Assembly (NCBI GenBank): GCA_002269645.1
Contig: NIVC01004616.1
Coordinates: 1 to 40,442, forward strand
Direction: 5' to 3'
Length of the DNA: 40,442 nucleotides
DNA from: Macrostomum lignano
Taxonomy: Eukaryota
The position numbers were made by a program, and so were the translations under genes. The notes beneath the pieces are model-generated. The model was not told the origin of the DNA. It did not search any database and was given only the letters and a program-made list of their open reading frames with translations. Below, piece by piece: positions 4,801-32,108 of this stretch. Position 1 is the first letter of the stretch. The number at the start of each line of letters is the position of its first letter.

Positions 4801-5143
4801 CGCCCACTCCGCAGGCCGCGGCGAGTACATGTCGGTGTTCCTGTCCATCTGCAAGAGCGAAAATGATCCATTGCTAATTTGGCCATTTGGTCATCGCGTC
4901 ACCATCTGGCTGCTGGACCAATGCGAGGACGTAAAGGCCAGACGGCACATTTGCTACTCTTTGAAGCCGAACACCTGCAAAGAGAACCGGCCTTTCTTAG
5001 GCCGCCCCACCGGCGAACGAAACGCCAGCTTTGGAGCGGTTAAATTTGTCCGACTGGAGACGCTGAATACGTTGGACTACATCAAGGACGACTCAATGTT
5101 TCTCAAAGTGCAAGTTGATTGCGAAGCACTTGTATCCCTGTGA
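1849..5143 (+). CDS. TRAF: TNF receptor-associated factor (TRAF family: RING, TRAF zinc fingers, coiled coil, MATH), 5 exons, 543 aa
   Basis: Exons 1849-2348, 2798-2951, 3241-3555, 3779-4112, 4815-5143. All introns are GT..AG with matching phases (2,0,0,1); total 1632 nt = 543 aa + TGA. RING CPVC..CGH.CC..C..CPLD (C3HC3D type seen in TRAFs), Cys/His zinc fingers, helical EEARNEKERLAAEL segment, MATH motifs LVWRIDSY, FSPPFLTHRYGYKL, WPFGHRVTIWLLDQ. In-frame TGA at 1834 lies upstream of the ATG. The paralog (TRAF3/4/6-like) cannot be assigned by eye. Confidence 0.95.
2478..2709. repeat. 22-bp minisatellite in TRAF intron 1
   Basis: (AGTAGTGAGYAGATAGCGGCTC)n, about 10 copies. Confidence 0.95.
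3012..3157. repeat. 22-bp minisatellite in TRAF intron 2, carrying TGACTCA
   Basis: (GATTCCAGAGTGACTCAGGACC)n; TGACTCA at 3021, 3043, 3065, 3087, 3109, 3131. Confidence 0.95.
3611..3722. repeat. 32-bp minisatellite in TRAF intron 3
   Basis: TACATCTAGTCATCTCTGCAGTCATTCATCGG at 3612, 3644...; about 3.5 copies. Confidence 0.9.
4187..4615. repeat. ~41-44-bp minisatellite in TRAF intron 4
   Basis: (AGCCCCTCAAACACCTCTCCCCAGAAGTCGCACAAATAA...)n, about 10 copies. Confidence 0.95.
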
Positions 5144-9409: not shown

Positions 9410-9745
9410 AGAGACAGAGGTAGGGGGCGCAAACCAAGAGACACGGGCGCTAATCAAAAGACACGGGCGCCAACTAAGAGACAGGGGCGCCAACAAATAG
9501 ACAGGGGCGCCAATCAAGAGACACGGGCGCCAACCAAGAGACAGGGGCGCCAACAAAGAGACACGGGCGCCAACCAAGAGACAGGGGCGCCAACAAAGAG
9601 ACACGGGCGCCAACTAAGAGACAGGGGCGCCAACCAAGAGACAGGGGCACCAACCCAGAGACAGGGGCGCCAACCAAGAGACACGGGCGCCAACTAAGAA
9701 ACAGGGGCGCTCATCAAAGAGTCAGGGAGCGCCCACAAAGACATC
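9410..9745. repeat. 20-bp minisatellite (ACAGGGGCGCCAACCAAGAG)n
   Basis: Unit at 9481, 9501, 9521, 9541...; about 16 copies. Confidence 0.95.
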
Positions 9746-9983: not shown

Positions 9984-12900
9984 ATGGCAGGCGCCATGCT
10001 GGGACTCTGGCTGGTCCTGCAGCTGCTGCTAACCGGACCTCAAGACGTATTTGCGATTAGAAATTGTTCGGATGCAGTAAGTGATTTGACTGACTCACTG
10101 GCTTATGTAGAATTGTTATTTAAATACAATTATACAATTGGATGCAAAAAATGTAGATATACAACCAGTTTGATGGCGTTCATATTTGTTTTTTATGCCG
10201 TTGTAAACGGCCATGAAGAGTTACGAGTACTCAGAGCCTTTACAAAATATATCGCAATCAAGTCTTAATACAGGAAACTGTAGTCAAGAATGTCCCGCAT
10301 AACGTTAATTTAACTTAACGTCAAATTTAAAAGCTTTATGTGCCGGTTGAACTCATGACGCCTTTGTATTAAACCACAGGGGGAGTTCGACTGTCCTGCT
10401 GCTAACGGCTGCACAAACATGAGCGCCTGTTTAGAACGCCTCCTGGATAAGGAGCAGCAGTGTCGTTTAAATAACTTGGTGAGCGCTTTGACGTTACTGG
10501 TTTCATGTTATATGTATATGTGTATCTGTAATGTAGTGTTCTTGTACATTTTCAACATTTAATAAAGGAAATATAGCTGTAGCGATATGAGTTGAATTAA
10601 GATCATGCATTTAACTTACACTCGAATTATTGATAAATGCGTGCTAGAAAGATCTATTAGTATGAATATTAAAAAGAGCATTTGTGAGGTCATTCATATG
10701 AGTCTATTGTACACTACATCACACAAAAACTTGGTTGAAAAATGCCTCAGATAGGCACCGCTTGCAGTCAGAATCCAAACAGTTATCTCTTGTGAAGAAT
10801 TCACAAGTTGGCAGTTGACGGAAGGTATTTTACACAAAACCCTGACTAATCTCGCCCCAACCTTGCTGGGTAGCAACTGCCAACACAGAAACTCGGTATT
10901 GTAAATGCTAAGAGGGTTAATCTTTCTCTCGCCACCAACTAATAGTAATACAAGCCCATGCAGGTAGTGACAAAAAACACTTGCTCCATTCATCTTATTT
11001 TATTCGGTTTTGACTATTGCCTGTCTGCGTACGAGTTGTTTCCCGCGGACCAGACCGAGCACGTACCTATTCGGTCGCAGGGGGGCTGCAGGCGCCGCTT
11101 TTAGGCTCCGCTCTAGTTAGAAGTTTCTTCAAATTCTATTCCTTGTATAGTCTAGGCGAATAATACACAAGTAGGCGCGATAGCGAGAGAATAAGCACGT
11201 GAATTGGCCTCGCAAGTTGGCCTCGTGCGCTGGCCTCTATTCATCCTTGCCCCAGAGCCACTTGTCTCTTGCTGTCTCTCCATTGTATTGTACTGTTGCA
11301 GGCAGCAGTAGGCGTGTGCGCCACCTTCTGCACTAGCAACAATCCTTTTAGTTTTTTTTATTTTACAACCACGGTTATTTAGAAAAATGCCATCTGTAGC
11401 TACTGATAAATAGCGCCTACGTGATATGCAAAAGATTGAGGATGTTAACGATTCAACTACGCGTAGGCCAACAAGAAAAGTACTTGTAACCAGATAGACT
11501 TTCTTAATGGTGAACACTTACAAAATTTTCCAGTAAACTTTTCAACCTTTCTCAAAGTGCTCCTTATATCTATAGATATGCGCCTTGTCACCTACATTAA
11601 AGTTTGGTTCACATCTGTAAACTCAAAGGAAGGTTATAGTACTCGCTCTTAAAGATTTAGTTTAATCTCAGAATGAATTGTGTTGTTGTATTTTTCAACC
11701 ACTTCTGATTACCCTGTAGATCGAATTCAAACCAGAGTTAATTTGTGAGAGTGTAGTTGAATCGCTCAATCATTGCAGTCTAAGGATTCACCATAAATTG
11801 GTCACATCTTGTTAATATACTATCCATTTTTATTCTTCTCTCTTACGTTGTCATTTAAAAATGAGTAGAGCTTGTACATATGCTGATTTTAAAACTCTTT
11901 GCCTTCATCAACACAAAGTCTCTCCGATCGTCTCCCTGATTCCTCAAATACTTTTTGGAAGCTTCTGCAACTTCCGCTTCTGCCTTTCTTTTTAAATGGG
12001 ACTGTCCAAGCGTAACGTGTCAAACAGCATGCCAAATGGTGCCTTTTGCATAGTGAATCAGTTTTCCTAAATGGGTTTTGGCTTTCTACTCGTATATGCT
12101 TTATGCAATTTTACAGCATCTTTATAACTAAGACCGTTTTCATATATGGTTAAGCAGTCTATGCAATTTTTGGGGTTAGTACTTTGAATGCCTGATCCAA
12201 AGCAAACTTTGACCTCAATGATACGTTTCACTAGATTTCGAAAGAGTCTCTCTTTCACAGGCAAGTCACTGGTTGGAATGGCATCTAAATCAGCAATCAT
12301 TTTCTCATCAGCTATATGCTTCTTTGCTAGAGCTTCATCTGGTGTGGGTAATGTCTTTTCGACACCTCGATAGTTTTTGTTATGATATAATAATATGCTG
12401 TTCAGTCGACTGGGTTAATTAGTAGACTCTCATAGCGCACCCCCTTATTGTTATATCTCACTACTTGCATAGAGATGCAAGTTAACTTTTGACTCTCTTC
12501 TGTAGGGGCTATCTGTAATTATGCGTCCTCTAGGTCGATGACGGACCTCGATGTCAATGCTTAGCGTTCGGAATGGCATGAAGAATTTCTTCTAGCTTTG
12601 GTAGAAGAAACTAGAAAAGGCTTGTATTGATCTGTATAGATGAGTCTATTGAGTATCACTGAGTAGTCTCCGCATATTCGCACTGCTCTTGCTGGTCCTT
12701 CGAGCTTCAACACCAGCCATCGGATTTTGAGCAGGATAAATGTTGCCTGCGCCCAGAAGTCTCTTCAACTCGATCTCGACATTAGTTTTCATTAAGAATG
12801 ACAGTGATGGAACTGGGTAGCACATAACCTTGAATGATACTTCATAGTTCAGGCGAAAGCTTGCTGTGAATTTGTTTGCATCGTTGACAGTGACAGCAGC

Positions 12901-15900
12901 GCACTTTAAGCTTGAGTCCAAGTTTGGTATCAGATGAAGTTGTCGAATGAAGTTCAATGAAAATTGTTTGACTGCGCTCTTCCCGCTGTTGTCCTTGACC
13001 GCAGCCTGCCTCAGCACTCCAAAAGCAGCTGCCTGAGAGCCTCCATACACTTTCAGAGACGTGGTGTTGTCGCTTTGAATTTCGAGGCCGGTCTTTGCAG
13101 CCAGGTTGTGAGGGATTGCAGAGATTTTACTCTCAGTGTCGACGCACAGAATAGTTTTCAAGCCACCAATTTTAAATTCCTTTAGCAAAAGGTTACTTAT
13201 TTTGTTGTTTGTAGTTTTGAGAATATTAGAATTTTGTCTCTAGTGGTTTTTGATGGTGCTGATTTAAAATATGAGCTTCATTTTTTGGTAGCTTCAACCC
13301 AATTATATGTAGCTTATTAGGGTTATTGACTATTTTATAGATTATTTATGGGAATTAATCTAGTCCATATATACATGGAGCTTGAATAGCCCATCCAAAA
13401 CCCTTTTAGAAATAAAATTATATTACCTCAACTAATTTAACAGCCTAAACTTGAATAGAGACCTCTGAACCTATTCAAGTTTGACTATAATAAATTATTG
13501 ATATTTAGATTGCTATCAATTGTAATCGGAATCTAATTTCAAAGAACAATATTTGGCAAAAATCAGGAAAAAAGTGCATGCTACGAAGTAACGACCAAAA
13601 GCTCACTGTTAGTGTTAGTAATAGATTAGTAAACACATTAGTTGATATGCTAATAGAGTTAGTAGATATTTATTAACAGTACTGATTCTTGCATAACCAA
13701 AATTATTCGGCAAGAAGTATGAATAGAATACAAAACAGCAAAGGTAAACGTTAAATTTTTATTCAAAATACTTCTTTAATCTTTTGTTTTGATAAAGGCT
13801 CATTTTTTAAATACATCATTCGTCGAAACTATTTGTAATCGAATTCTCATTAACAGCATAGGGGATTAACAAAATTGAGGTTGCATAACCACTGAAGGTA
13901 TTTTTTGCAGTGGCTTTTGCATTTTGTAACTTTCGGTACCCCCTGGAAAAAAAGTGTCTGGAAAAAAGTATTAAAAAATCGGAAAATCGGAAGTATTTGA
14001 TCGACCTAAACTTAAAAAGTCCAAAAGTATTGATGACTAGCAATCAGAACGACATTGTGGCAGCATGGGTAGACTTAAAAAATCATTTGAAACGACACAA
14101 TAATGGCATGCCGAGGTCTTCTTCAGATTTGATCTCTCTAAAGCATTTCGATGTTACGTCTTTCTCCAATATTCAGAGTTTCTGCCCGAAACAAGGAATC
14201 TGCTACAACAGTACCGTTCACATGTCTTTGGACAACTGTAATTATTACATGAGCAGCCCGTGTGACAATGCCACACGCACCAGCACTGAGCCACTGATCC
14301 GATGCAATCCCGGATACCAAATGTGCCTAACACAGGCTCAGTGCGATGAAGTGGTGGCAAAGAGGTCGTGTCCAAACAAAAATTTGCTTATCCCGTTTGT
14401 GTGGCCTGCAGCCTCCTGCTTTATTCTTCCGCGTCTGAAGTTTCGCTTCACCGTTGTGCAGCAAGCGGGTCCTCCTGTGATGAGACTTGGATCTAACAAA
14501 CTCAACAACAGCCGCATCGGAGAGGAAATCCAACTCAACAGGCTTCCTGATAACAGCATCTGTGAGAGCGCAGACGCACAGGAAATATCCAAATACGCCG
14601 GCTCCAATGCGAGTCTATCGTGGGTAAAGCTGAGGTTTCGCTACGTCAACAAAGACAACAAAGTAGTCGCAGAGTGTCAACCTACTTTCGGATTGCTGCT
14701 TCCGCCGAAGTTGCGACCGCCACCAGCTGGATTCCCAACGGTCGTGCTGAAAAAGAACAGCACTTCTCACATTAATGAAATTATCATCCCAAGGAATATT
14801 TTAAGCTCAGTATTGAACCAGTCCACAGCATCTGCGCCGTGGTGCGACAGTCTCGGTCAGGCCGAATTTCCCAAATCCTCATTTAACGACCACGTTCGTC
14901 AGCTGTGTCGAGAGACGCCGAGGAAGGCTGCCTACTGCTACATCGAGGCGTCGTCGCTCTACACCGAATATTCGTTCTACGCCCACTATCTTGGCGCTCC
15001 ACCTTATAAGTTCGGCTCAGGATATCTATCGCTATCGGTTGAAGGCTCATACTTTAAAGCGCATCTAAGACAGCCGGGCAGGGTCAATTTGACATGCAGA
15101 CTGTGGAACGGACTGCTTCCGGTGCAAGGCACGCCTCCAACTGACGGAAACTACTTTGGAGACGAGATTCTTCGAATTGAGTATTCATTCAGCTGCTATC
15201 CTGGCTATGTTCCCTGTTTGGCTTCAAAGACTTGCATTTCTTCTGGTGATTTGTGCGAAGCACCGACGAACTGCAGCTCTGTAAGGTTTTTTTCTGTCAT
15301 TCTTATGTGCATCTGAGTTTTCTGTTGCTCTGTAATCGTTAAAATTATTTTTTAGGCTGAGACATACTGTGAGGAACTCAAGCGATGCGCCCCTGTTGGA
15401 TCCTGTTCAAGCACAACGCGGAGTATGGACTCAACAGTGCTGCCCTCTGTGTCTACCCTTGAGTCACAGACATCCACAGTAACCGATCAACGGACTACGG
15501 TTGGTCCTCTTACTACAATCAATCCGAAAACTACAATCGATCAACTGACTACAGAAAAGCCCAGAGATTGCCGATACAAAGTGAGTACAAGCTACTCTCT
15601 GATTTTTTCGTGTTGTTCCAACTTCAAATAAAATCAATTGCTGTCTTTTTACGCAGGTTGCCTGCCCACCCAGTGGTTTACTACTCTGCAAGGCTGCTTG
15701 TGTGCTGTCTCTTGTCGAGCAGGGTGCACAGTGCAACGCAAAAGGCAAGGTAAGTGTTAAAGTGGCTATTATTAGCATTCTCAGCAATACATGCTAATCT
15801 AGTGAAGCAAAAATGCCGCTCGTTTCAGAGATTCTGTCCATCCAACGGTGTTTGCGAGAATGCTACAGCTGAGTCAAGCTTCTGTGCGTCTCTGCCTCAA

Positions 15901-18900
15901 AATTTCACGATATGCGAGGGCGTCAACGAGGTGAGTGGCATAATGCATTTGGCTTTCTATATTTCATAATTACATTCGTAGCAGGTGCAAAAGATCATAG
16001 TTTGCATTACGTATGTCTAATGAGCGGTGACGATGTTGTTTTATTCAAACTGCTCACCCTTAGACTGCCTGTCCTCACGCATTCGGTGCCTGCTTGGACT
16101 TCGCCAACTGCCGCCAACTGTGCCCTCGCTCTCATCGGCTTTTGCCAGCTGCCCAGCTCGTTTCTGGATTCAAGGGCTTGTACAGGGGTGCTCCGGACCC
16201 CGGTGTCTGTCGCACAGGTCACATTCTTGGCGCTGTGTCTGCCGCACGCATCAGAGTGCTTTTTGTCAGCCCGGCACCAGGTATCGAGATGGAGCTGGAT
16301 GGTCGCAAAATCAACGTCAGCGGAAGTTCAGAGCCGATCAGACCCGACAGTTGCTTCCAGTTTCTCGTCCACGGCGCTCAGAATGTACTTATCAATCTCA
16401 CGTACTCGCTGCTACTTCCAGACGGATCAGAATGCGTTATGAGAACCTTTGTGCTCCTACCTCCGAGAGCTCTACCTCCAAATGTGACACTGATTAAATC
16501 CAGCCTCAGCGTCATGGACACTTCTGTGCTGAATGTGTCTCTCTCCACAGTGCTGGTGTTGAGTCCAAACGGGTTCCCGAGCAGCAGTGTGTGCGATCTA
16601 AGACTCGACAATCTAATTGATCTGCACTCCGAGCGAAGTGTCTGCAACATGCGTTCAGGGGTTGAGTCCTCGACTGTCGGTGGCGTGTTCTGCAAGTACA
16701 TGGTGGAGCCAGTGTGGTAAATTTACTCCTGCTTTTGAATCTTACCCGCTTCTAAACGTTGTTAGCAATGTACAAAGAAGCGAAACATAAATCAGTCTTA
16801 ATATTTTACTGAATAAAATAAAAAGTAGAATGATTAATGTATCATGTGAATAGTTGTGGCTCCGGTAAAATATATGATGCATGCATATGTTTTTTGTTGA
16901 ACTTTCAGGCCTGACATCTACGGAAAACTGACGTTCCGAAGTGGAGTCACAGAAAGCGGTATCATCGAGTACATGAGAGGCTTTCTCGTTCCGAGTTCAA
17001 GCCAAGCCCACATACGATTCGAACCAAATCGCAATGCCGCTACCAAGACCTTCGTTCTGATGTGCCAGGCTTGGAGTGGACTGCCGCCTTACTTCAGCTA
17101 CACCAGCTCTGGTTCTCTTGTTCCATCCGTCCTTCCTTCTACAGCCATGGGTGGGACAGTCATCTTCAAGATCAGCGTGCTGCACAACGAGCATCTTCCT
17201 GTTGTGAATAAAGATTTTTTCACTTTTGGTGTTCTCAAAGACAGGGAGAACGAGTACGTGAGTCAGAAATTACAGCGAGAGCGAGGCTTCATGCTGCAAC
17301 GGCACGGAGAAAACTACGGCACCCAGATTCGGGTCGGCGACATGGTATCAATGTTCTTTTGTGACGATAATACATCCGAGTTGGGCGCTCTCGTTCTGCA
17401 AGGCTTCGGCGACGATGCAAGTGGTGTTCTGGAGTACCAGCTGCCGAACTCAATGTCCTGGCAGACTTTGAATGTATCTGCAGACAAGCCTGCGTTTAAG
17501 CAGTACCGTATGCTGTCGCATTTCAAGGACTCAGCAAAAACTGCGGATGCCTTCTCAAGCATCCAGTGCGTGGGAAGCATTTCATCTATATCTTCCTCCA
17601 CGCAGCAGCTCTCTGACTTCCTAGCAGATGACGTCAACAGTACGGGGCCTGTCACCGCGATGTTCCTCCCAGCCAACGCTTCGATCCGATTTCGGCCTAC
17701 GGTCCCGGCGTCCTGGTCCCGCAGTCGCGCCATCCTTGCTTTTACAGCCGCAGAGAAGCTGGTCGCTCAACAACAAGTCTACATCAACCCACTCGTTGTC
17801 AGTAGCGTGGTCAACAAAAGTGCAGCCGCCGGGTGGGTAGTTGTACGTCCAGTGACGGTTGGCTGTGACAATCAGCCGTGGTCAGGTCTCCAGACTGATG
17901 TCTGTAAAATCTGTGGTGGAAATGGTCGCTCATGCATCGACTGCAACGGTGATGCGAATGGCACAGCGATCTGGAACGACTGCGGCAACTGCGTTGGTGG
18001 AAGAACTGGCAAAGCCATGCGATATGGCAAGGACTGCGCTGGTCGATGCAATGGATCCTTTGTCTCGCCAATCCCTGGTCTGTGCTACAATTCCAGTCGA
18101 TATCCGACTGCTGATGAGTACATCCGCTCGGTGTGGTGCGATGGCAACGTGAACAGAACTGCGCGCACCAATAAGTGCGGCTTCTGTACCGAGGGAAGCA
18201 CCGGACGATCCACTAACTTCGGCGTGGGACCTTGCGGCTGCAGCAACGACACTTCTTGTATCACAGGCTGTGACGGTGTCGTTGAGCCATCGGTGTCGCT
18301 CCGAAAGACTCTGGACAAATGCGGTCGTTGTCTACAGCCCAGTGACCCACAGAGAGACATCTGCAATCGGATTCACTTCACAATAAGCCGACATGCATGC
18401 GTGGGGTCGTACGCTGCTCAGCAGCAAGTGACGATCCTCAGCAGCAGCATCAACATCACAATCAGCTCAATTGCTCTGCGCCTGATGAGGGTGACCGATC
18501 GGGTAAGGCATCAATTCCATTTTTCTGGGATAAACCAAAAGCTCTTTTACGCCGCCATCAAATCGCACGAATTTACACAACGATGTAAAATGCGGCAAGA
18601 ATTTGTACAAGCCGTGTAGTTCGTACATTTATCTAGATGATGACGGAAAAAGCTAAAAAAGGAAATAAACCTTTCCTTGCCTGAAGGTATAATTACACTG
18701 ATAGTAGATGCAGGTGCATAAAGCAGTCTAGATAATAATTCCAGTAAGACTCAGAATCCTGAAGCTTTAATTGATAAGTTTGTAAGTAACGTTATTAAAA
18801 TAAAAAAGATTTTCTCTGCTTTCGCATTGAGAGTCCTTCTACATGGAGCTTCAAGCATTGTCCATCGATATATCTTCTGGTCTGTTCCGCTTTTCCGCAC

Positions 18901-21900
18901 CTTTGAGTCTCGTGGCGGGCCAGTACGCCCTGCAGGTGAAATACTTGACCGCTTCCGGTGCTACAGTCATCGAGGACGTTTCCGGTGGAAACTTGACTAT
19001 TTTTGGACCTCCCAGCTTGTCTAGCTTGAGTGTCGGGAGTGGACTCACACTAGAAAATCCCGTTTACTCTCTGCCAGTGAGAGGACAGGGATTCGTCAAC
19101 ACGCCCGATCTCGCCTGCCTTCTCTACTGCGACGATCTTAGCCGCCACACCCGATGCGACCCGCGCACTGGCTTTCTCACTGTGCCCGCTATATTCGACA
19201 GCGCGACCAGTGTCACCTGCAACATCTCTGCGCTGGCCAAAGTCGGACAGCCGTTGCAATGGAAGCTCAGCGTCATGAACTGCAAGCCGCAGACACTCAG
19301 CCACGATGCATTTGCGGTGTTCAAGTGAGTGACTTGTTTCTCGTTATTACAAATATAATTCTTTGCACTAAGTGACACATTGATTACACTTCTTGCAATC
19401 ACCGACCAGGCAAAACTCTCTGTCGCTCTCGATACGCTCGAGTAAGGGTCCAGTGCTGCTCTCAGCAACTGATGACGCCATTGGCTACCACCTGCGTCTC
19501 GAGTTTGACACAAACATCCAACTGCGACAGACAGCATGCTCAGCCATCTTTAATGCGTCGACTCTTGCGCTGATAGGTTCAGGCTCAGAGTGCTACGCGC
19601 GGGCAAACGTTCTCATCGTGCGGAAAGATCGCGGTACTGCAATCTGCTCTGGCTCACGAATCAGCATCAATTCGAATATCATTTATGTGGATGGCAGTGA
19701 CGTCAGCCTGGCCACCAGTTCCAGTGTCAGCAACGCTGTTGTGAATACAAACAGTCGGGAGCCGCCAGTCATCTTTCTGGCCGGAGTCCAGTCAGATGCC
19801 AACAATGTAGCCACCGTCGGATTCTGCGACGCGTTTACCCTGTATGCCACCGTCAGAGGATCGATGGTACAGCGGATCACTTGGGACATCCGCTGTGCCA
19901 CAGGCTCGACCTGTCAAACAACTGAGCTGGCCGCATTCCAGTCAAAATTTTCTACAGAAGTCACTTTCTACGCCGGAAAGGATGTTAGTGCTCTCCAAGT
20001 GCTCAAGTCAGAGAATATAACTCCAAAATATTCATCAGCTCACATTCTCATTTCTTTGCTTTGTATCTTCAGATTCCACCTGGCGAGTCATACAACATCA
20101 CGGCTTTTGCCCAGAACGAATGCGGAACGCAGTCAAATACTGCGAGCATTGTAGTAAAACGACTCGACGAACGAACACCATTCAGCATTAATATCTACGG
20201 ACAGCAAAAGCATGTGATGCCCGATCAGCCGTACAGTGCTGTGCTTATTGTCCGACCTTCATTTTGCTATATCAAGGCTATCGACAGTCTGAGTGTAAGT
20301 AACAGTACTCTGAGAACGCTTACCGGTATAGTAGAAATCGTGCATCAGAACACGATGATAGATGCAAAGACTATAACAAATCGTACGAGCGTAATTGTGA
20401 TATTAGTAAAATGTCTTACTATCGAATAAAAAGTACGCCTGTTCTTTACTGTTCAATAAAATAACTTGATTAGGCTCTTAACCTCCACACTTTACTTTTG
20501 CAGTACAAATGGAAGATCGTGGGTGGTACTAGAGCCGTCAATGTCGAACAACATGGGATCACAGGTCAATTCTTCCGACTGAGATCTGGAGTCCTGCAAG
20601 GAGGCCAGACCTACAACCTCAGTGTCTGCGCTTCCATGCCGACTTGGCCCAGCGTGGCGTGCGGCTTTTTGCTTCTGGAGACCATCAGCCGCCCTCTGAT
20701 TCCCATTTTCCTTCGCGGAGGCCGCTCTGATCTCGGCGTCAGCGAAGCACTGCAGGAATCCGTGTACATCATCGATCATGACTACTCGACCGAGACGACA
20801 TTTTGCACCTTCTATCTGACCAAACGGGCCAACGGTGAGGCAATCTACATGCGCAACATACACACGGGGAACATGCTGTCCTCATTTAGCTTCTTCGGTT
20901 CGGATGGAACTCAGACATCATCGAACAGTATCCAAGTGCCTTGGCCGAATCCCAGTGTATACGAGCTACCCTCAGGCTTCATGAACCTCACTGTGAGTTG
21001 TCAGCGGGGTCAGCGACGGTCCAGTAGTACAAAGCTTGTGCAGATTTTGCCTCGTCCGCCTCCATCAGTCCGGATCTTGACCGAACCGAGCAACAAACCA
21101 ATCAATCCAAACGCTGTTGTCCATGTGACAGCTCTAGTGATTGCCAGTGAGATCACTCAGACCCAATGGTCAGTGGAAACTCAAGAGACTGGCTTTGGCT
21201 CGCTGTCGCTTGAGCAGTGCTCAGTAGGACCGCCGCTGGCCGATACATGCGTACCCAATCGTCGCTGCTTCATCACTTTGGTTCTCCAGCCAGGACGGAG
21301 TTGCAGCTTTGCTGCCGGTGTCTCCTATCAACTGCTTTTGATTGCCAGCGCCAGTTCCGGGACCGCTCAGGCCCAGTTCGACTTCCGCGTCAATGCGCCG
21401 CCAAGTGGTGGAGCACTGTCTGTGACTCCCACCCAAGGAGCCGCTCTGGAGACCTCCTTCACGCTCACAATATGGCCGAATATTACTGACGATTCCGACG
21501 TGTTCTTCAGTTACAGCGCCATGTGCTGTCGCCAAGATTCATCAAGCCAGTGCGTCAGCGTAACTAGTGAACCAACGCCCGCTAGACTGCTCACCACCCA
21601 TCTACCTGGAGGAAACTGGATCTGCAAAGCTTCAGCCATCGACTCTAACGGAGCAGGCTCAGATTGGTTCTCATTTACTACTGCAATTCAGGTGCAAGCG
21701 AAACAGCTAACGCTTGCCAAGCTTGACGATTTACTAAACAACTTGAACAATATTTCAAACAGCTGTGAGTGCGATCAAATTATTTTCGATTTTATTTTCA
21801 TATTACTGCAGCAAAATTAGAATTAACACAGTATCGATATCATAACTTGCATTACAGTTGACGCTCCAGCTCTAGGAGGAATGATTCTGAGTGAGCCAGA

Positions 21901-23943
21901 TACTGGTCTATCGCCCGAAGAAAAGAACAAGAAGAATGAGCTAGTGCAGGGACTAGCGATTCAGGATCTTCTGACTTTAGACACAAGGTATAACTCCTGC
22001 TGTCCTGTCAGCAGTGTGGAATAACTAATGGGTGGTATTTTATTCAAACTTTATCGATTATTTCAGTGTGCCATCAGTATCGTGTCTGAGGACTGCAACA
22101 AGCTGTCAACTGTTTCGGAAAACGAGAGCCAACAAGCAGTACATAACAAACTTGGTACTGAGAACTCTTAAAAAGTGCCTTGATGCGTTTCATTCTCAGT
22201 TGTTTTCACCAGATTCACCAAATGGCGCAAGGAGAAGGCGCGACACATCGGGATCTCAGGGTGGAACAACAAGTAAAATAACTGCCTCTGAAGTGAAGTC
22301 CGTCCTTGAAATTGCATCCGGAGTCTATCACTCCACGCTTGACTCGACAGCAGCTGCCGATATCCAGGCTACAATTCTTAACACCGTGCCTGCCTTCTGC
22401 AACAACCAAAATCCGAACTCGCTAGCTCAAGCGGCAGCGTCTACAATGGCTGTTGTACGCGTTTACAAGACTTCTTTCAATTCGGTGGGTTCAGCCAATC
22501 TGGAGATGGGATGCGACTCAGGAAGCACCGACTGTCTATCCAATTTCAAAGTCCGTCAGCAGATTGCACTGGGAGCCGATCTTGAACAGCGCTACTATAA
22601 CTGGTCATGTGGCCAGACTGACTGCTTCCAGGACGGTGCCTGCATCGGAACCATCCTGCTGGACAAGGATCTGCTCACTCCACAGGCCAAAGTGGCTTCT
22701 CCAACGATTTCCACGCGACGCAGTCCTTTGGCCTACGTAGGAATTTTTCACCCGAGCGACGGCGCGAACCAGAATGTTTCACGCCTCAGCAATGGTGTGG
22801 CTATCACCACCAACATCAGTGGCTCTGTGAATCTCAGTAGCATCAGCCTCATATGCCGCAGCTGGAGCGGAGCCGACTGGACCCCGGATAACTGCACGAC
22901 TCGCGCGCCATTCCAGACCGACGATGGCATCTGGCACGTAACGTGTGTGTGCCATGACATATCCTCATTCATTGGCGTCTTTGAGGGACCACCAGGCTTC
23001 CAACCGGAGACAACTATCGCTCCGTCTACCACCAAAAGTGAGACTAGCCGACACTCGACACTGCAGTCGACACTCTCAGAGACGCAAACTTCAGCTGCAA
23101 CGTTTTGGAACAGCATCACGACGACTACATTACCTCCTGTAACGGCTCCGACACTCTCAAAGACGGACACTGTAGCTGTGACACTCCAAATCAGGGTTAC
23201 AGAGTCATTCTCCAGCGTCGTTACCAACGAAAGCAGCCTTCGAAGCCACCTGACGGGTCAGCTTGCGCGTCAGCTAAGGCTCGTCGAGTCGCAACTAACT
23301 GACATGGAGTTTAAAAATGGTAGCGTTCTTATCAGTTTTACCGTCAACAGTCAGTCTGGTGCCAACACTAGTGCTTCTTTCGCTGTGTATCTACTGGTGC
23401 AGCTCATGAACAACCGCCAGCTCGTGTTACTTAGCCTGAGCAACAGCAGCCTAACTGTGTCCTGGGAGTACCTGCGGCTTCTTGATGTGAAATCAGCTTT
23501 GCAGCCTACTATAAAGAATGGCAGCGACAACACTAGCATCGCTGTTGGTGCTTCAGTTGGTGCCTTTTGCCTAGTTGTGACTTTTATAGTAGTCATTCTG
23601 CTTATGCAAAGGAACAAGCGAAACTCTAAAGTCCCAGAAAAACATGAGAGCAGCTTCAGAAATGATTGGAGTACCGGCCGTGGCTCGAGAGCGATGGAGA
23701 CAAGTTGGCCAGTGGGTGTCATTCCAGTAAAGTTCGCGCCACCCCGTTGGAAAACGGTAAGACGCTCTGAAACTTTCGGTGGGATACATGCTTGCTTATT
23801 TGCATTTTCATTCTTTGCATCAACGCGCACCCGTGTCCTTCCAACACCAGGAAATGCTCAGTGAGGCGGGTCCATCGCAAATTCGAGAGTTGAGAGCTGA
23901 GCCAGTGAGGGAGCGGAGCAACTTGAATTACTATTATCTTTAA
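9984..23943 (+). CDS. Large single-pass polycystin-1/REJ-like receptor (Cys-rich ectodomain, TIG-like, REJ-like, GPS, mucin stalk, SEA-like, 1 TM), ~2,880 aa
   Basis: Phase-consistent model: 9984-10076, 10380-10478, 14048-15280, 15356-15580, 15657-15749, 15829-15930, 16064-16716, 16909-18502, 18834-19324, 19410-19983, 20073-20390, 20504-21764, 21858-21987, 22067-23756, 23851-23943 (8649 nt, ends ...NYYYL-TAA). N-terminal signal peptide MAGAMLGLWLVLQLLLTGPQDVFA; TM at 23538-23606. Uncertain boundaries: acceptors at 14048 and 18834, and donor 20391 versus 20295. Confidence 0.85.
11450..12462 (-). mobile_element. Decayed Polinton/Maverick (adintovirus-like) PLA2 plus retroviral-type integrase fragment
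   Basis: Frameshifted translation gives INPVD*TA..H..NY..KKHIADEKMIADLDAIP...ERLFRNLVKRIIEVKVCFGSG (PLA2-like), VKLHKAY, RYAWTVPFKKK, ERLCVDEGKEF*NQ, AMIERFNYTL..LW.EF..QGNQKWL, PNFNVGDKAHIS..KEHFEKG, VFTIKKV. This is the motif order I recognise from Maverick integrases. Confidence 0.75.
12463..13200 (-). mobile_element. Decayed Ty3/gypsy LTR-retrotransposon pol fragment (aspartic protease and N-terminal RT)
   Basis: ORF 12646-13188 has CVDTES (D-T-G-like protease site) and YPVP..LM..VEIELKRLLGAGNIYP. After frameshifts it reads LLPKLEEILHAIPNAK and VIDLEDA*LQIA..EESQKLTCIS, matching gypsy RT motifs up to the first catalytic Asp. Stops and frameshifts are present. It lies in intron 2 of the receptor gene. 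Confidence 0.8.
17897..18370 (+). other. Cys-rich D-C-x-G-x-C / D-x-CG-x-C-x-G repeat region of the receptor ectodomain
   Basis: DVCKICGGNGRSCIDCNGDANGTAIWNDCGNCVGG..KDCAGRCNG..WCDG..NKCGFC..GCDG..DKCGRC: a recurring Asp/Cys/Gly spacing in ORF 16973-18619. Confidence 0.6.
19005..19324 (+). other. IPT/TIG-like Ig-fold domain of the receptor
   Basis: GPPSLSSL..G..LPVRGQGF..L.CL....VPAIFDSATSVTC resembles the TIG pattern P.I.SL.P..G...V.G.GF...C.F...VPA...S.T.I.C. Confidence 0.55.
19410..21764 (+). other. REJ-like module of the receptor
   Basis: YKWKIV, YNLSVCA, PLIPIFLRGG, ITQTQWSV, YQLLLIA and especially NAPPSGGALSVTPTQGAALETSFTL (~21392-21470), which matches the characteristic PP.GG...V.P..G.AL.T.F C-terminal REJ motif. 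Confidence 0.7.
22854..22970 (+). other. GPS (GAIN C-terminal) motif, variant
   Basis: CRSWSGADWTPDNC...TCVCHDISSF fits C-x2-W...W...C...C-x-C-x-(H)-(L)-(T/S)-x-F; the canonical HL|T/S triad reads D-I-S here. Confidence 0.7.
23163..23480 (+). other. SEA-like membrane-proximal domain
   Basis: Beta-alpha..beta pattern TVAVTLQIRVTESF...LRSHLTGQLARQL....EFKNGSVLISFTV containing F-x-x-G|SV (23319-23330), directly after an S/T-rich stalk and before the TM helix. Confidence 0.6.
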
Positions 23944-27813: not shown

Positions 27814-29149
27814 ATGTAAGTGTCTTAGCGATAGCAACTTCAGTCACAGTAACATTTTAGTCACCGATCCAATTTACCTCAACAACTTTCAAGCAACCAC
27901 ACCCAACTTCCCCCACTCTAAACTTCTCCACACCAGATTTACCACACCTGATTTACCACACCAGATTTACCACACCAGATTTACCACACCAGATTTACCA
28001 CACCAGATTTACCACACCAGATTTACCACACCAGATTTACCACACCAGATTTACCACACCAGATTTACCACACCAGATTTACCACACCAGATTTACCACA
28101 CCAGATTTACCACACCAGATTTACCACACCAGATTTACCACACCAGATTTACCACACCCAGTTCCCTACACGAAGTCTTCCCCACTCAATTCGGGATTTC
28201 CCGAACCCGCCGCAGGTCAGTCTCGCTTTTGCCGCTCTTCCTGACGGTCGCGGTGGTCGCCGCCTGCCTGACGACGCCGACGACCGCCGAGTCCGCCGCC
28301 GGCTGGCCGACCGCCGATTTTGTCGAGCGTCGCAACGACGACACGTCATCGCCGTCGTCCTCAGCGCCGTCTTCGTCCGAGGTCGACAACGCCGTCCGCG
28401 CTGAGGTCGCCTGGTGCCGGCGCCTGGTTGTCGCCGAGCGCGTCGGCGGTCTGAAGGCGGCGTGGGAACTCCTCACCGGGACTGGCGCCGTCTCTGGCCG
28501 GCCCTTGGCTAAACGGCGCGGAAAGTACATCTGGAGGTAAATCTGGTGTGGGTGTGGTAAATTGGGTGTGTTATCTTGGGTGTGGTACATCTGGTGTAGT
28601 TAATCTGGTGTGGAAAATCTGGTGTGGTAAATCTGGTGTGGTAAATCTGGTGTGGTTAATCTTGTGTGGTAAATCTTGTGTGGTAAATCTGGTGTGGTAA
28701 ATATGGTGTGGTAAATCTGGTGTGGTAAATCTGGTGTGGTAAATCTAGTGTGGTAAATCTAGTGTGGTAAATCTCGTGTGGTAAATTGGGTATGGTAAAT
28801 CTGGTGTGGTAAATCTGGTGTGGATAATCTGGAGTGGAAAATCTGGTGTGGAAAATCTGGTGTGGTAAATCTAGTGTGGTAAATTGGGTATGGTAAATCT
28901 GGTGTGGTAAATTTGGTTTTGCATACTGTTTTTGGTAAATTGGGTATGGTAAACATTTTATACTGTAAATTTTGCTATACTCGTAAGTATGGGGCAGAAA
29001 TCTGGTGTTTCGAATGAAGTGTGGTAATTGAAAAAAATGGTCTGGTACAAAATGACTGTTTAGTTTTGTTTGTGTTTATTGTCTGCACTAATTAAATAAT
29101 AATAAACTTATTGTACGACCGAATTTATTAAATAAATTTCAGGCTGTGA
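27814..29149 (+). CDS. Small secreted peptide / neuropeptide-like precursor, 109 aa, start codon split by an intron
   Basis: AT(27814-27815)|GTAAGT intron 27816-28215 ..CAG|G gives ATG. Exon 28216-28536 has strong GC3 bias, no stops, and supplies signal peptide MSVSLLPLFLTVAVVAACLTTPTTA plus dibasic sites RR, RR, KRR. Donor AG|GTAAAT at 28537; acceptor TTTCAG|G at 29143 gives R-L-TGA (29147-29149). The ORF-track start at 28229 is only a TTG. Confidence 0.7.
27929..28160 (+). repeat. 14-bp tandem array (ACCACACCAGATTT)n, left arm
   Basis: About 16 near-perfect copies inside intron 1 of the peptide gene. Confidence 0.95.
28537..28955 (-). repeat. 14-bp tandem array (GTAAATCTGGTGTG)n, right arm, reverse complement of 27929-28160
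   Basis: More degenerate copies beginning exactly at the splice donor at 28537. Confidence 0.95.
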
Positions 29150-29424
29150 GGTGCAGCAGATTCAGTCTGGAGTGTGTCTCAGAATGCTGAGAGTTGAATC
29201 TCAGCTGCAGTTACTTTTATTGTCATCTGATCCACTGCGACCCGACAAAACTTGCTGATTAAGTACATCGAACCTTCAACTGTCACTGCTTCAAGAGGCA
29301 GCAAAAGAGTTGCAAAAATACAAAGAGACAGGGGCAGCCACCGTCAGAGGAATTTTGCTTGCAATGCTCAGATCTTTGAGCTGGTATTTTCTGCTTCTTT
29401 CTTTGCCTGGCATTTCTTAAAAGA

Positions 29425-29880
29425 GATGAAGGGAGGGGATTGTGGCTGGTCGGGAGATAAAGGGAGAGGACTGTGGTAGGTTGTGAAATGAAGGGAGAGG
29501 AGTGTGGTAGGTTGTGAAATGAAGGGAGAGGAGTGTGGTAGGTCGAGAGATGAAGGGAGAGGATTGTGGTAGGTTGTGAAATCAAGGGAGAGGAGTGTGG
29601 TATGTCGGGAAATGAAGGGAGAAGGATTGTGGTAGGTCGGGAGATGAAGGGATAGGACTGCAATAGGTCGGGAGATGAAGGGAGAGGAGTGTGGTAGGTC
29701 GGGAGATGAAGGGAGAGGACTTTGGCTGGTCGGGAGATGAAGGGAGAGGACTTTGGTAGGTTGTGAAATGAAGGGAGAGGAGTGTGGTAGGTCGAGAGAT
29801 GAAGGGAGAGGACTGTGGTAGGTTGAGAGATGAAGCTGAGAGGACTGTGGTAGGTCGGGGGATGAAGGCAGAGGATTATG
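29425..29880. repeat. 31-bp purine-rich minisatellite
   Basis: (GTAGGTYGKGARATGAAGGGAGAGGASTGTG)n; AGGGAGAGG at 29461, 29492... Confidence 0.9.
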
Positions 29881-30161
29881 GTTAGTCGAGAAGGAAGTCG
29901 CTTATCATATCCTATGCTTTTCAAACCATACAGAATAAATAATTAGATTACAGACCGTGAGGAAATCAAGTCAGACAAACCGACAACCCAAAGAATAATG
30001 AGACATGAGCTTGGGGAGTCTTTGCTGCTGACATCAGAGCCTCTGCATGTGGCTGTCAGATGGATTTAGTTTTTTTCATTCAAAACTACCAGCTTTGACT
30101 GTGGGCAGGGTTGATGCGCTTAGAAGTCTTGAATGTCACAGAACGAGAGCAGAATCAGATA

Positions 30162-31128
<967 letters not shown>

Positions 31129-31442
31129 GGTAGACGCTGACAAAAGGCAGAGAAAAAAGAAAAAGACACAAAAGACTTTCCTGATTGCCAATTATTTCCA
31201 CATAATTCTTCCATTGCTCTAATATTAATGAACCAATTATCCAATCCACGTTCAAGACCGTTGGCTGAAGCAATTTTTTACGCAAAAGTCAGAAAGTAGT
31301 CTTAACGCAGCTTGGAGTGAACAGCCAGCCTCAGTCCTCGTGTTCAATTATTGGCTGGCATGACCACTACGGACTGGAAGTTTGTCAGGCCAAGCTGCAT
31401 CAAATAGGCTTCATCCGACATGAACAAAGTAGAGACAGCGTC

Positions 31443-32108
31443 ATGGCCAGCAACAGCAGCAGCGACACGGCCACGGCCGGTTGGAATTTCTTCCTTGGCG
31501 ACACCATCGTGATCCTGGTGGTGGGCCTGGCCGCGGCCATCCTGCTGGCCTACTGCCTGTTCCGCTGCTGCTTCCGCGACCATCCGTCCTGCCCGCCCAA
31601 GGACATCGAGCGCATGGTCGAGGAGGACGACGACTCCGACTCAGACGATTATGACGACTTGACTGACGATGACGGCAACAACGAAGGCGACTCTGGCGAT
31701 GTTGCAAGCGACGAAGAAGAAGAAGGCGCTCAGGAACTCGAGTGTTGGCAGTATTTCGGCATGGCAACCGATGAAGAGTGGCACCAGGAGTTCGACAGCA
31801 GCGCTGGCAGCAGCGAAGCTGAGCAGCCCTGCTCCCACCAGCTGCACGAGGGCGGGGAAGCGTCGGTGGTCACGGCGGTGCACCACCAGCACCCGTCTTG
31901 CAGTCGGCCGCTGCTGTTGCAGTCGCCGCAGGCCTCGCCATTGAGCTCCGCAGCGTCGGTGCTGGCCCAGCTGCAGCGGCAGCACCGGTGGCGGCAGCTG
32001 AGGCGGCTTCAAATGATGGAGCAGCGGCAGCTGATGCCGGCTCAGACTCTGGTGCAGCTGCAGCCCGACAGCGAGGGAGGCACTGCGACCAGGGTTGAGT
32101 TGCTGTGA
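31443..32108 (+). CDS. Single-exon type III single-pass membrane protein with acidic and Gln-rich cytoplasmic tail, 221 aa, unknown family
   Basis: First in-frame ATG at 31443 (the ORF-track start at 31317 is GTG). MASNSS (N-glycosylation sequon), hydrophobic FFLGDTIVILVVGLAAAILLAYCLF, juxtamembrane C-LFR-CC, Asp/Glu-rich tract, GC3-rich codons in the 5' half. Confidence 0.65.
   Translation: MASNSSSDTATAGWNFFLGDTIVILVVGLAAAILLAYCLFRCCFRDHPSCPPKDIERMVEEDDDSDSDDYDDLTDDDGNNEGDSGDVASDEEEEGAQELECWQYFGMATDEEWHQEFDSSAGSSEAEQPCSHQLHEGGEASVVTAVHHQHPSCSRPLLLQSPQASPLSSAASVLAQLQRQHRWRQLRRLQMMEQRQLMPAQTLVQLQPDSEGGTATRVELL

What the first reader, a model, noticed from the sequence alone, without database searches (positions are those of the whole stretch)
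9984..23943. Giant receptor with an unusual REJ - GPS - mucin - SEA - single-TM architecture
Seen: a phase-consistent ~2,880-aa ORF with signal peptide, Cys-rich N-terminus, TIG-like and REJ-like modules, GPS motif (22854-22970), S/T-rich stalk, SEA-like domain (GSV at 23319), one TM and a short tail ending NYYYL. Known: in polycystin-1 and adhesion GPCRs the GPS sits directly before the first helix of a multi-pass membrane region; sea-urchin REJ1 is single-pass but has no SEA domain after the GPS; in GPR110/GPR116 the SEA domain precedes GAIN. Inference: here the GPS is ~190 aa from the membrane, separated by a mucin-SEA spacer, so it cannot act as a tethered agonist for an attached 7TM/11TM region. 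It may define an undescribed class of shed or mechanosensory adhesion receptor.
Basis: partly seen in the sequence, partly recalled or inferred. Interest (0 to 1): 0.8.

Follow-up and report, generated by a model that had tools for sequence, protein, structure and literature searches.

The report
Single-pass REJ–GAIN–SEA membrane glycoprotein
A flatworm gene encodes a giant cell-surface protein in which the self-cleaving GAIN module, which in polycystin-1 and adhesion GPCRs sits directly against the membrane, is instead separated from a single membrane anchor by a second self-cleaving-type module (SEA); unstudied proteins in cnidarians and insects share this layout.

Summary
Window 9984-23943 (+) carries an intron-containing gene of 12-14 exons encoding about 2,650-2,715 aa. 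The closest relative is a Macrostomum lignano protein.

Confirmed parts:
- signal peptide and Cys-rich N-terminus
- REJ domain (Pfam E=4.9e-19)
- GPS motif at 22854-22982, inside a region whose AlphaFold model matches only adhesion-GPCR GAIN domains (Foldseek 2.6e-10)
- a 63-aa S/T-rich linker
- a beta-alpha-beta-beta-alpha-beta domain whose best structural matches are juxtamembrane SEA-like domains (EpCAM, Trop2, IA-2)
- one TM helix and an 80-aa tail ending NYYYL

Pfam does not detect the GPS, SEA or TIG parts. Those rest on fold prediction, motifs and homology.

The same collinear architecture occurs in 'uncharacterized' proteins of Hydractinia and Schistocerca and in two unnamed transcripts. 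In this subfamily:
- the GPS cleavage triad H-L-T is degenerate (D-I-S here, x-L-G elsewhere)
- the SEA Gly-Ser is invariant
- a furin-type RxK/RR site before GAIN is conserved

Best reading: a new variant of the REJ/PKD1 family, a type-I glycoprotein whose GAIN cannot be a tethered agonist and whose juxtamembrane cleavage and shedding role probably lies in the SEA domain. Function is untested.

The parts
9984..23943 (+). Whole coding span of the gene. Exons: 9984-10076, 10380-10478, 14177-15280, 15356-15580, [15657-15749], [15829-15930], 16064-16716, 16909-18502, 18834-19324, 19410-19983, 20073-20294, 20504-21764, 22213-23756, 23851-23943 (includes the stop). Bracketed exons are probable cassette exons.
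   Evidence: GT-AG, phase-consistent joins. Junctions 2/3, 4/5, 5/6, 8/9, 9/10, 10/11 and 11/12 are matched by the M. lignano protein P0001. The acceptor of exon 18834-19324 is the least certain.
9984..10055 (+). Signal peptide (MAGAMLGLWLVLQLLLTGPQDVFA)
   Evidence: Sequence read directly; hydrophobic core with KD19 1.59 at aa 1. An upstream in-frame ATG at 9951 is an alternative start.
10380..16716 (+). Cys-rich N-terminal region. It contains repeated ~30-aa 'xCPxxxxC...C' modules encoded by phase-0 exons, and an S/T-rich linker in exon 15356-15580.
   Evidence: Translations. No Pfam match. Homologous only to P0001.
17864..18373 (+). Cys-rich region with repeated C-x-x-C-G-G motifs
   Evidence: The BLASTP match of model aa 973-1208, which spans this region (aa 1044-1213), is 33.6% identical to Hydractinia P0140 residues 1134-1364, E=1e-27. 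The region also matches Schistocerca P0074 residues 36-110.
18834..19324 (+). IPT/TIG-like region
   Evidence: No Pfam hit in the window itself. Model aa 1331 onward aligns to P0140 from residue 1472, which overlaps that protein's Pfam TIG domain (1460-1530, E=1e-9).
19410..21764 (+). REJ module. The Pfam REJ match itself covers about 20606-21760.
   Evidence: PF02010 E=4.9e-19, profile positions 53-432 of 452. 108 REJ-family hits among 1.84 billion representative proteins.
22227..22244 (+). Polybasic furin-type site ARRRR|D in the disordered linker just before the GAIN domain
   Evidence: An RxK/RR motif is conserved at this alignment position in every sequence of the subfamily and its close relatives (9 sequences from 8 proteins, counting both Tachypleus repeats). 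pLDDT is below 50 for residues 1-17 of the GAIN model. Cleavage is inferred, not shown.
22284..23006 (+). GAIN domain: helical subdomain followed by a beta sandwich
   Evidence: AF2 pLDDT 79.8, pTM 0.80. The top 7 Foldseek PDB hits are all adhesion-GPCR GAIN domains, E 2.6e-10 to 1.7e-5, followed by a sharp drop.
22854..22982 (+). GPS motif (CRSWSGADWTPDNC...VTCVCHDISSFIGVF). The triad position reads D-I-S instead of H-L-T.
   Evidence: Regex and alignment. In the model it forms the last two beta strands, residues 240-246 and 251-257.
22983..23171 (+). S/T/P-rich (mucin-like) linker, 63 aa
   Evidence: 43% S+T and 54% S+T+P. No tandem repeats. Its length varies among homologues, from absent in Hydractinia to well over 100 aa in Schistocerca and P0002.
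23172..23489 (+). SEA-like domain. The candidate autoproteolysis site G|SVLI has its Gly-Ser at 23319-23324.
   Evidence: AF2 pLDDT 75.9, pTM 0.68, topology b-a-b-b-a-b with G59-S60 in the b2-b3 hairpin. Foldseek top hits are EpCAM, Trop2 and IA-2. G-S is invariant in 5 lineages.
23538..23606 (+). Single transmembrane helix (IAVGASVGAFCLVVTFIVVILLM), followed by the basic stretch QRNKRNSK
   Evidence: KD19 2.79, the only strong hydrophobic segment. A chance-level similarity to the TM of sodium-channel beta-2 illustrates its type-I character.
23607..23943 (+). Cytoplasmic tail of 80 aa (23607-23756 plus 23851-23940, separated by a 94-nt intron), ending NLNYYYL, then the stop codon
   Evidence: The splice KT|EML is matched by P0001. 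No Pfam match.

Best explanation
The locus encodes a type-I, heavily N-glycosylated, single-pass membrane protein of a Macrostomum flatworm. It belongs to an old, uncharacterised metazoan subfamily of the REJ/PKD1 family.

The collinear core of the subfamily is: Cys-rich CxxCGG region, IPT/TIG, REJ, furin-type site, GAIN domain with a degenerate GPS, a variable S/T-rich linker, a SEA-like domain with an invariant Gly-Ser, one TM helix, and a short tail.

Shown here: the exon structure, the REJ domain, the GAIN fold, the SEA-type fold, the single TM, and conservation of the architecture in Cnidaria, Platyhelminthes and Arthropoda.

Inferred:
(1) The GAIN domain is a structural ectodomain module. 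It neither self-cleaves efficiently nor provides a tethered agonist, because the catalytic His is Asp and no multi-pass region follows.
(2) The juxtamembrane SEA domain self-cleaves at G|SVLI during folding. This leaves the giant ectodomain held non-covalently on a short membrane stub, from which mechanical load or proteases can release it, as in MUC1-type mucins.
(3) A proprotein convertase cuts at RRRR|D between the REJ and GAIN modules.

The protein would then act as an adhesion, load-bearing or shed surface receptor rather than as a channel-associated polycystin.
For: Gene and homologue: gene model and collinear homologue P0001.

Domains:
- REJ by Pfam, 4.9e-19.
- GAIN: AF2 pLDDT 79.8; the seven best Foldseek hits are exclusively GAIN domains, 2.6e-10 to 1.7e-5.
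- SEA: AF2 pLDDT 75.9 with b-a-b-b-a-b topology and G-S in the b2-b3 hairpin. The best PDB matches are EpCAM, Trop2, IA-2 and dystroglycan, all described as SEA or SEA-like juxtamembrane domains (PMC6586460).
- The only hhalign stretch against MUC1 SEA places NGSV on the MUC1 cleavage site PG|SVVV.
- G-S is invariant in window, P0001, P0002, P0140/P0148, P0074/P0136 and P0032.

GPS pattern:
- The triad is H-[LM]-[TS] in every hit examined where the GPS lies 23-28 aa from a TM helix.
- It reads D-I-S, Q-T-G, Q-L-G, T-L-G or Y-L-S wherever a SEA-like domain intervenes. That spacing was measured at 148-266 aa in four lineages and is comparable in P0032.

Other: the furin-type site is conserved in all members and sits in a low-confidence, presumably exposed linker. 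There is a single TM. The RefSeq homologues end after one TM.
Against: - No sequence-level match to Pfam SEA or GPS, even at E<=10. hhalign probability against MUC1 SEA is only 1.4%.
- Foldseek E-values for the SEA model are marginal (about 1e-3). The ferredoxin-like sandwich is a common fold, and canonical mucin SEA structures are not among the top 50 hits. The top hits (EpCAM, Trop2, IA-2) do not self-cleave.
- The AF2 alignments were shallow (8 and 13 rows).
- Macrostomum keeps a Ser at the GPS +1 position, so GAIN cleavage cannot be excluded.
- No transcript evidence was available, and no cleavage, localisation or expression data exist.
- The N-terminal ~970 aa have no detectable relatives outside Macrostomum, so the ligand and biological role are unknown.
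Confidence: 0.65

Rival explanations
1. The juxtamembrane domain is a non-autoproteolytic SEA-like 'proteolytic switch', as in Notch HD, dystroglycan and EpCAM. It hides a metalloprotease site that is exposed by force or ligand binding, and it does not self-cleave at G|S.
For: The best structural matches are EpCAM, Trop2 and IA-2, which lack the autoproteolytic site (PMC6586460). Pfam SEA is not detected. hhalign against MUC1 is not significant.
Against: Gly-Ser followed by [VIT]-[VIL] is invariant at the b2-b3 hairpin in five distant lineages whose identity to the window sequence elsewhere in the domain is only 12-23%. This is the signature of the self-cleaving SEA site and aligns with the MUC1 G|SVVV.
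Confidence: 0.25
2. The Macrostomum GAIN domain is still autoproteolytic and cuts between Ile and Ser of D-I|S-S-F. The protein would then carry two self-cleaving modules in series.
For: The GAIN fold is intact, and the +1 residue is Ser, a possible nucleophile. P0032 also keeps a Ser at that position.
Against: The general-base His at -2 is Asp here. In the other SEA-bearing lineages apart from P0032, the +1 residue is Gly, which cannot act as a nucleophile. Selection on GPS cleavage therefore seems to have been lost in the subfamily.
Confidence: 0.12
3. The architecture is an artefact of gene modelling. Either two neighbouring genes are fused, or real downstream exons encoding PLAT and multi-TM segments were missed, so the true protein is an ordinary polycystin-1-like protein.
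For: No RNA evidence could be consulted. Several introns had ambiguous splice choices. The M. lignano database model itself contains frameshift artefacts.
Against: - GPS, linker, SEA-like domain, TM and most of the tail all lie in one uninterrupted exon (22213-23756).
- An in-frame stop follows at 23941-23943, and no stop-free stretch of 90 aa or more lies between 24000 and about 27280 on either strand.
- Independent RefSeq models in Hydractinia and five Schistocerca species, and two intron-free transcript contigs, show the same C-terminal layout.
Confidence: 0.04

Closest known systems
[quoted passage not shown]
   Same: Large, heavily glycosylated ectodomain with a REJ domain and a GPS upstream of a single TM. 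No PLAT or 11-TM channel-like region. SpREJ8 and SpREJ9 are about 3,000 aa, with no recognised domains upstream of REJ.
   Different: SpREJ1 has EGF and C-type lectin domains. No SEA-like domain between GPS and TM has been described for any of them.
Polycystin-1 / PKD1-like proteins and adhesion GPCRs (GAIN-domain receptors)
   Same: A REJ module followed by a GAIN domain (polycystins). The GAIN fold superposes on BAI3, latrophilin, GPR56, GPR126 and GPR110.
   Different: In those proteins the GAIN abuts the first helix of an 11-TM or 7-TM region, and its last strand acts as a tethered agonist after H-L|T cleavage. Here GAIN is 186 aa from a single TM, the triad reads D-I-S, and a SEA-like domain occupies the juxtamembrane position. 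In GPR110, GPR116 and GPR126 the SEA domain lies N-terminal to GAIN, which is the opposite order.
SEA-containing transmembrane mucins (MUC1 type) and SEA-like juxtamembrane modules (EpCAM/Trop2, IA-2, dystroglycan, Notch HD)
   Same: S/T-rich segment, then an alpha/beta sandwich, then about 17 aa, then a single TM and a short tail. The G-S-[VI] motif sits in the b2-b3 hairpin as at the MUC1 G|SVVV site. Structural matches were found to EpCAM, Trop2 and IA-2.
   Different: There is no PTS tandem-repeat mucin domain; the linker is only 63 aa. The ectodomain is built of REJ, GAIN, IPT and Cys-rich modules. There is no significant sequence similarity to Pfam SEA.
Uncharacterised homologues: Hydractinia symbiolongicarpus XP_057306062.1, Schistocerca americana XP_047002346.1 (and orthologues in four other Schistocerca species), Macrostomum lignano A0A1I8FVC6
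   Same: Collinear CxxCGG region, IPT/TIG, REJ, furin-type site, GAIN with degenerate GPS, SEA-like domain with G-S, one TM.
   Different: The N-terminal ~970 aa are specific to Macrostomum. Linker length differs. The Hydractinia protein lacks the mucin-like linker. None of these proteins has a described function. The UniProt name 'ZP domain-containing' for the Macrostomum protein is not supported by Pfam.

Membership tests
REJ / PKD1 family | REJ domain (Pfam PF02010) | tested here: met
   E=4.9e-19, 68.7 bits against a cutoff of 25, profile positions 53-432 of 452.
REJ / PKD1 family | GPS/GAIN domain upstream of the first TM helix | tested here: met
   GPS Cys/Trp pattern. AF2 model with top Foldseek hits exclusively GAIN domains. 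It lies 186 aa from the TM rather than adjacent to it.
REJ / PKD1 family | PLAT domain and 11 TM segments (polycystin-1 type; absent from SpREJ1, 8, 9 and 10) | tested here: not met
   One hydrophobic helix only and an 80-aa tail. No PLAT by Pfam.
REJ / PKD1 family and adhesion GPCRs | Cleavable GPS triad H-L|T/S | tested here: not met
   The window reads D-I-S at the aligned positions. Canonical hits in the same alignment read H-L-T. Actual cleavage cannot be tested with these tools.
Adhesion GPCR | 7-TM region directly after GAIN | tested here: not met
   Single TM, 186 aa after the GPS.
SEA domain | Alpha/beta sandwich, b-a-b-b-a-b | tested here: met
   AF2 pLDDT 75.9. Elements: E9-21, H29-43, E51-57, E60-68, H77-89, E105-118. 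Foldseek top hits are EpCAM, Trop2 and IA-2, probability 0.98-1.0, TM-score on the query up to 0.61, but E only about 1e-3.
SEA domain | G|S[VI]VV autoproteolysis motif in the b2-b3 hairpin | tested here: met
   NG|SVLI at aa 2474-2479. G-S is invariant across five lineages. It aligns with MUC1 PG|SVVV. The MUC1 sequence was checked against PDB entry 2acm, whose chains split at that bond.
SEA domain | Significant match to the Pfam SEA profile (PF01390) | tested here: not met
   No hit at E<=10 for the window or for any of the 8 homologous segments. hhalign against MUC1 gives probability 1.4%.
SEA domain | Autoproteolysis with non-covalent association of the two chains | not testable with these tools
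   Needs expression and western blotting or mass spectrometry.
Transmembrane mucins (MUC1 type) | Long PTS tandem-repeat domain N-terminal to SEA | tested here: not met
   No tandem repeats inside the gene. The S/T-rich linker is only 63 aa.
IPT/TIG domain | Match to Pfam TIG (PF01833) | tested here: inconclusive
   No hit in the window. The homologous region of P0140 and P0002 scores E=1e-9 and 6e-9 and aligns to model aa 1331 onward.
ZP domain (the UniProt name of the closest homologue) | Match to Pfam Zona_pellucida | tested here: not met
   No Pfam family at E<=0.1 in P0001 or in the N-terminal 1,685 aa of the model. The PROSITE profile could not be run.
Uncharacterised REJ-GAIN-SEA single-pass subfamily (Hydractinia XP_057306062.1, Schistocerca XP_047002346.1) | Collinear CxxCGG, TIG, REJ, RxK/RR site, GAIN, SEA-like (G-S) and one TM | tested here: met
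   BLAST collinearity, alignments, and GPS-to-TM spacing of 148-266 aa with one TM.

The most novel reading that the evidence does not exclude
This gene is a member of an ancient (pre-bilaterian) and so far undescribed receptor class. In it the GAIN domain has been uncoupled from the membrane and has lost autoproteolysis, while a SEA domain has taken over the juxtamembrane, force-labile cleavage role. That would be a natural swap between the two known self-cleaving ectodomain modules. It would show that GAIN has a function independent of tethered-agonist signalling.
Probability: 0.4. Interest if true: 0.7.

Novelty: new variant of a known kind. Interest (0 to 1): 0.55.

Why it matters
GAIN domains are generally understood through their position against a 7-TM or 11-TM region, where cleavage exposes a tethered agonist. 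This conserved subfamily places GAIN about 150-270 aa from a single anchor, has a degenerate GPS triad, and has a conserved SEA cleavage motif in the juxtamembrane position. That offers a natural experiment on three points: what GAIN and REJ do apart from agonist delivery, how the two autoproteolytic modules substitute for each other, and how REJ proteins function without a channel-like C-terminus. It also gives a provisional description for a set of 'uncharacterized' RefSeq proteins in cnidarians and insects, with related REJ fragments in cockroach and a nematode and a related, SEA-less tandem REJ-GAIN protein in horseshoe crab.

Tried and rejected
- The search for homologous proteins with the last exon, the REJ exon and a SEA alignment returned nothing, not even proteins that the exhaustive HMMER search later found. 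I treat this as a limit of the word index, not as absence.
- Pfam at E<=10 on the GPS, SEA, GAIN, TIG and Cys-rich segments gave no relevant hits.
- Sequence searches of PDB gave only chance matches. I tried the last exon, the REJ exon and the SEA profile. The hits were the sodium-channel beta-2 TM helix and influenza HA2.
Only contiguous exons could be used, and no transcript contigs of the source organism were retrieved.
- Literature searches for REJ+SEA+GPS, GAIN+REJ+SEA and Macrostomum+REJ found no description of this architecture.
- I considered and rejected a transmembrane mucin (no PTS repeats), an adhesion GPCR or polycystin-1 orthologue (one TM, no PLAT), and a ZP-domain protein (no Pfam support).
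My models give 2,650-2,715 aa.
Full report
1. What is in the sequence

The window is eukaryotic and rich in minisatellites. Between 9984 and 23943 the + strand holds a series of long open frames. The largest are 1.1-1.8 kb.

These frames join through canonical GT-AG sites in a consistent phase into a 12-exon, 2,650-aa protein. Two further 93- and 102-nt phase-0 exons lie in what I first took for a 483-nt intron (15657-15749 and 15829-15930). They have very good splice sites and encode the same kind of small Cys-rich module as exons 2, 3 and 5. They would split that intron into 76-, 79- and 133-nt introns, similar to the gene's other short introns of 75-94 nt. With them the protein is 2,715 aa.

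2. Source and closest relative

An exhaustive HMMER search of 1.84 billion representative proteins with the REJ exon gave 108 hits. The best (P0001, E=2.9e-221) is UniProt A0A1I8FVC6 from the free-living flatworm Macrostomum lignano. The window therefore comes from M. lignano (a paralogous copy) or from a close relative.

P0001 is collinear with my model and confirms seven splice junctions. That database model itself carries stretches that correspond to other reading frames of the window, and it skips part of the GPS. These look like prediction artefacts.

3. Domain by domain

Confirmed directly:
- REJ: Pfam PF02010, E=4.9e-19.
- A signal peptide, 99 cysteines, 45 N-glycosylation sequons and a single strongly hydrophobic helix followed by a basic stretch define a type-I topology.

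Pfam does not see GPS, SEA or TIG, even at E<=10. I tested those three by other means.

(a) GAIN. I aligned the 264 aa before and including the GPS with 12 homologous segments and modelled the region with AlphaFold2: pLDDT 79.8, pTM 0.80.
- Foldseek against PDB returned GAIN domains of BAI3, BAI2, CELSR1, latrophilin-1, GPR56, GPR126 and GPR110 as the only seven hits with E<=1e-3 (E 2.6e-10 to 1.7e-5).
- After those the list collapses to probability below 0.2.
- The GPS motif forms the last two strands of the model.

(b) SEA. The 131-aa segment between the S/T-rich linker and the TM was modelled from an 8-row alignment: pLDDT 75.9, pTM 0.68.
- The topology is b-a-b-b-a-b, with Gly59-Ser60 in the b2-b3 hairpin. 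This is the SEA layout.
- The best PDB matches are the C-terminal domains of EpCAM and Trop2 (probability 1.0, TM-score on the query 0.5-0.6), then the IA-2/phogrin ectodomain, with dystroglycan lower down.
- All of these are treated in the literature as SEA or SEA-like juxtamembrane domains (PMC6586460).
- The E-values are marginal (about 1e-3) and the ferredoxin-like fold is common, so this is support rather than proof.
- hhalign against the MUC1 SEA sequence is not significant (1.4%). Its only aligned stretch puts the family's NG|SV on the MUC1 PG|SVVV site. I checked the MUC1 sequence against PDB entry 2acm, whose two chains split at that bond.

(c) TIG. Model aa 1331 onward aligns with the Hydractinia and P0002 proteins over the region where these carry a significant Pfam TIG domain.

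4. A conserved subfamily

The same collinear layout (CxxCGG Cys-rich region, TIG, REJ, GAIN/GPS, linker, SEA-like domain, one TM, short tail) is present in:
- Hydractinia symbiolongicarpus XP_057306062.1 (2,756 aa)
- Schistocerca americana XP_047002346.1 (1,735 aa), with orthologues in four other Schistocerca species
- a 2,913-aa intron-free transcript contig (P0002, run SRR33215971)
- a 1,377-aa transcript (P0032)

These are documented. All named members are called 'uncharacterized'. Related fragments come from Periplaneta and Anisakis. Tachypleus has a tandem duplication of REJ-GAIN-linker without SEA or TM, and P0006 has GPS, a short linker and an anchor.

Among the hits examined, GPS-to-TM distance falls into two classes:
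- 15-34 aa: the REJ/PKD1-like hits with the GPS next to the membrane, several of them multi-pass (P0006, with a degenerate triad, also falls here)
- 148-266 aa with one TM: this subfamily

Three patterns emerged from the alignments.
- The GPS triad is H-[LM]-[TS] in all the canonical membrane-adjacent hits, but reads D-I-S (window), Q-T-G, Q-L-G, T-L-G or Y-L-S in the SEA-bearing proteins.
- The SEA Gly-Ser is the only invariant pair across the SEA alignment, at 12-23% identity to the window sequence for the distant members.
- An RxK/RR polybasic site lies at the same alignment position in every member (RRRR here; KRKRR, RRRRRR, RRKR, RGKR elsewhere). It sits just before the first GAIN helix, in a segment AF2 predicts to be disordered.

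5. How it most likely works

Shown: topology, domain folds, and conservation.

Inferred:
- After signal-peptide removal, the protein is cut by a furin-type convertase between REJ and GAIN.
- It is also cut autocatalytically at G2475|S2476 in the SEA domain. This leaves a large ectodomain held non-covalently on a stub of about 175 aa that carries the TM and the tail.
- The GAIN domain cannot deliver a tethered agonist, since there is no multi-pass region, and it probably no longer self-cleaves.
- By analogy with SEA mucins and SEA-like 'proteolytic switches' (PMC6586460), the juxtamembrane module would set the force or protease threshold for shedding.
- The ligand-binding part, presumably the REJ, TIG and Cys-rich regions, is unknown. 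So are the tissue and the biological role.

Rivals are a non-cleaving SEA-like switch (0.25), a still-active GPS in Macrostomum (0.12) and a gene-model artefact (0.04).

6. Comparison with what is known

The closest described proteins are the single-TM sea-urchin REJ proteins SpREJ1, 8 and 9 (PMC1934368). No SEA domain is reported for them, and I could not test SpREJ8/9.
- Polycystin-1 and adhesion GPCRs share the REJ and/or GAIN modules but not the topology.
- In GPR110, GPR116 and GPR126 the SEA domain precedes GAIN.
- MUC1-type mucins share only the C-terminal cassette.

Full-text searches found no paper describing REJ with GPS/GAIN and SEA in one protein and none linking Macrostomum and REJ.

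I classify this as a new variant of a known kind, the REJ/PKD1 family. It is real, conserved and undescribed, but functionally uncharacterised.

7. Verdict

Interest is 0.55. The decoupled GAIN and the apparent hand-over of autoproteolysis to SEA are notable for the adhesion-GPCR and polycystin field, and they are testable. Single-pass REJ proteins were already known, however, and nothing is known about function.

Noticed in passing
window 1837-5140 (+): The upstream neighbouring gene is a TRAF-family protein. Its exons encode a RING finger, TRAF-type zinc fingers (E=2e-22) and a MATH domain (E=1.5e-21). Its introns are filled with 22-bp, 32-bp and 84/128-bp minisatellites.
   Followed up: partly
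window 12646-13188 (-), inside the 3.7-kb intron 2 of the gene: A 180-aa ORF on the opposite strand has a weak retroviral-type aspartyl protease match (PF13650, E=3e-4). It is probably a retroelement remnant, which may explain why this intron is far longer than the others.
   Followed up: partly
window 15657-15749 and 15829-15930 (+): Two phase-0 mini-exons of 31 and 34 aa, with very good splice sites, encode 'xCPxxxxC...C' modules like those at the start of exons 2, 3 and 5. They are absent from the M. lignano database model, so they may be alternatively spliced cassette exons.
   Followed up: partly
window 22227-22244 and the aligned positions in P0001, P0002, P0006, P0016, P0032, P0074, P0140: A furin-type RxK/RR site is conserved in all subfamily members immediately before the GAIN domain.
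   Followed up: partly
P0001 (UniProt A0A1I8FVC6, Macrostomum lignano): The database model of the closest homologue contains stretches that match other reading frames of the window (for example LLRFGWNSDIIEQYPS and PRDAVLWPT). It also skips the last GPS strands and an IPT exon and starts with a partial duplication. It is named 'ZP domain-containing', but no Pfam ZP or any other family is detected in it.
   Followed up: partly
window 9424-9741, 27928-28917, 29422-29882, 30162-31129, 32701-33330, 33853-36563, 37896-39468, 40059-40442: There is a very high density of tandem repeats around the gene. A 20-bp array ends about 240 bp upstream of the start codon. Other arrays include a 43-bp satellite of about 62 copies (2.7 kb) with extreme C-over-G skew, (ACAG)58, a 20-bp array of 37 copies, and about 260 copies of CTGAAT.
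   Followed up: no
window 31269-32105 (+): A 279-aa open frame contains a predicted single TM helix (ILVVGLAAAILLAYCLF) followed by a very acidic D/E-rich tail. It has no Pfam match, and it is unclear whether it is a gene.
   Followed up: no
P0016 (Tachypleus tridentatus XP_076332546.1) and P0009 (Chrysophaeum taylorii KAJ8598673.1): The horseshoe-crab relative carries two tandem copies of REJ-GAIN-mucin and no TM in its model. REJ-domain proteins with a long C-terminal region after the GPS also appear in a stramenopile alga and in many unnamed marine-metagenome proteins, so the REJ module is not confined to animals.
   Followed up: no
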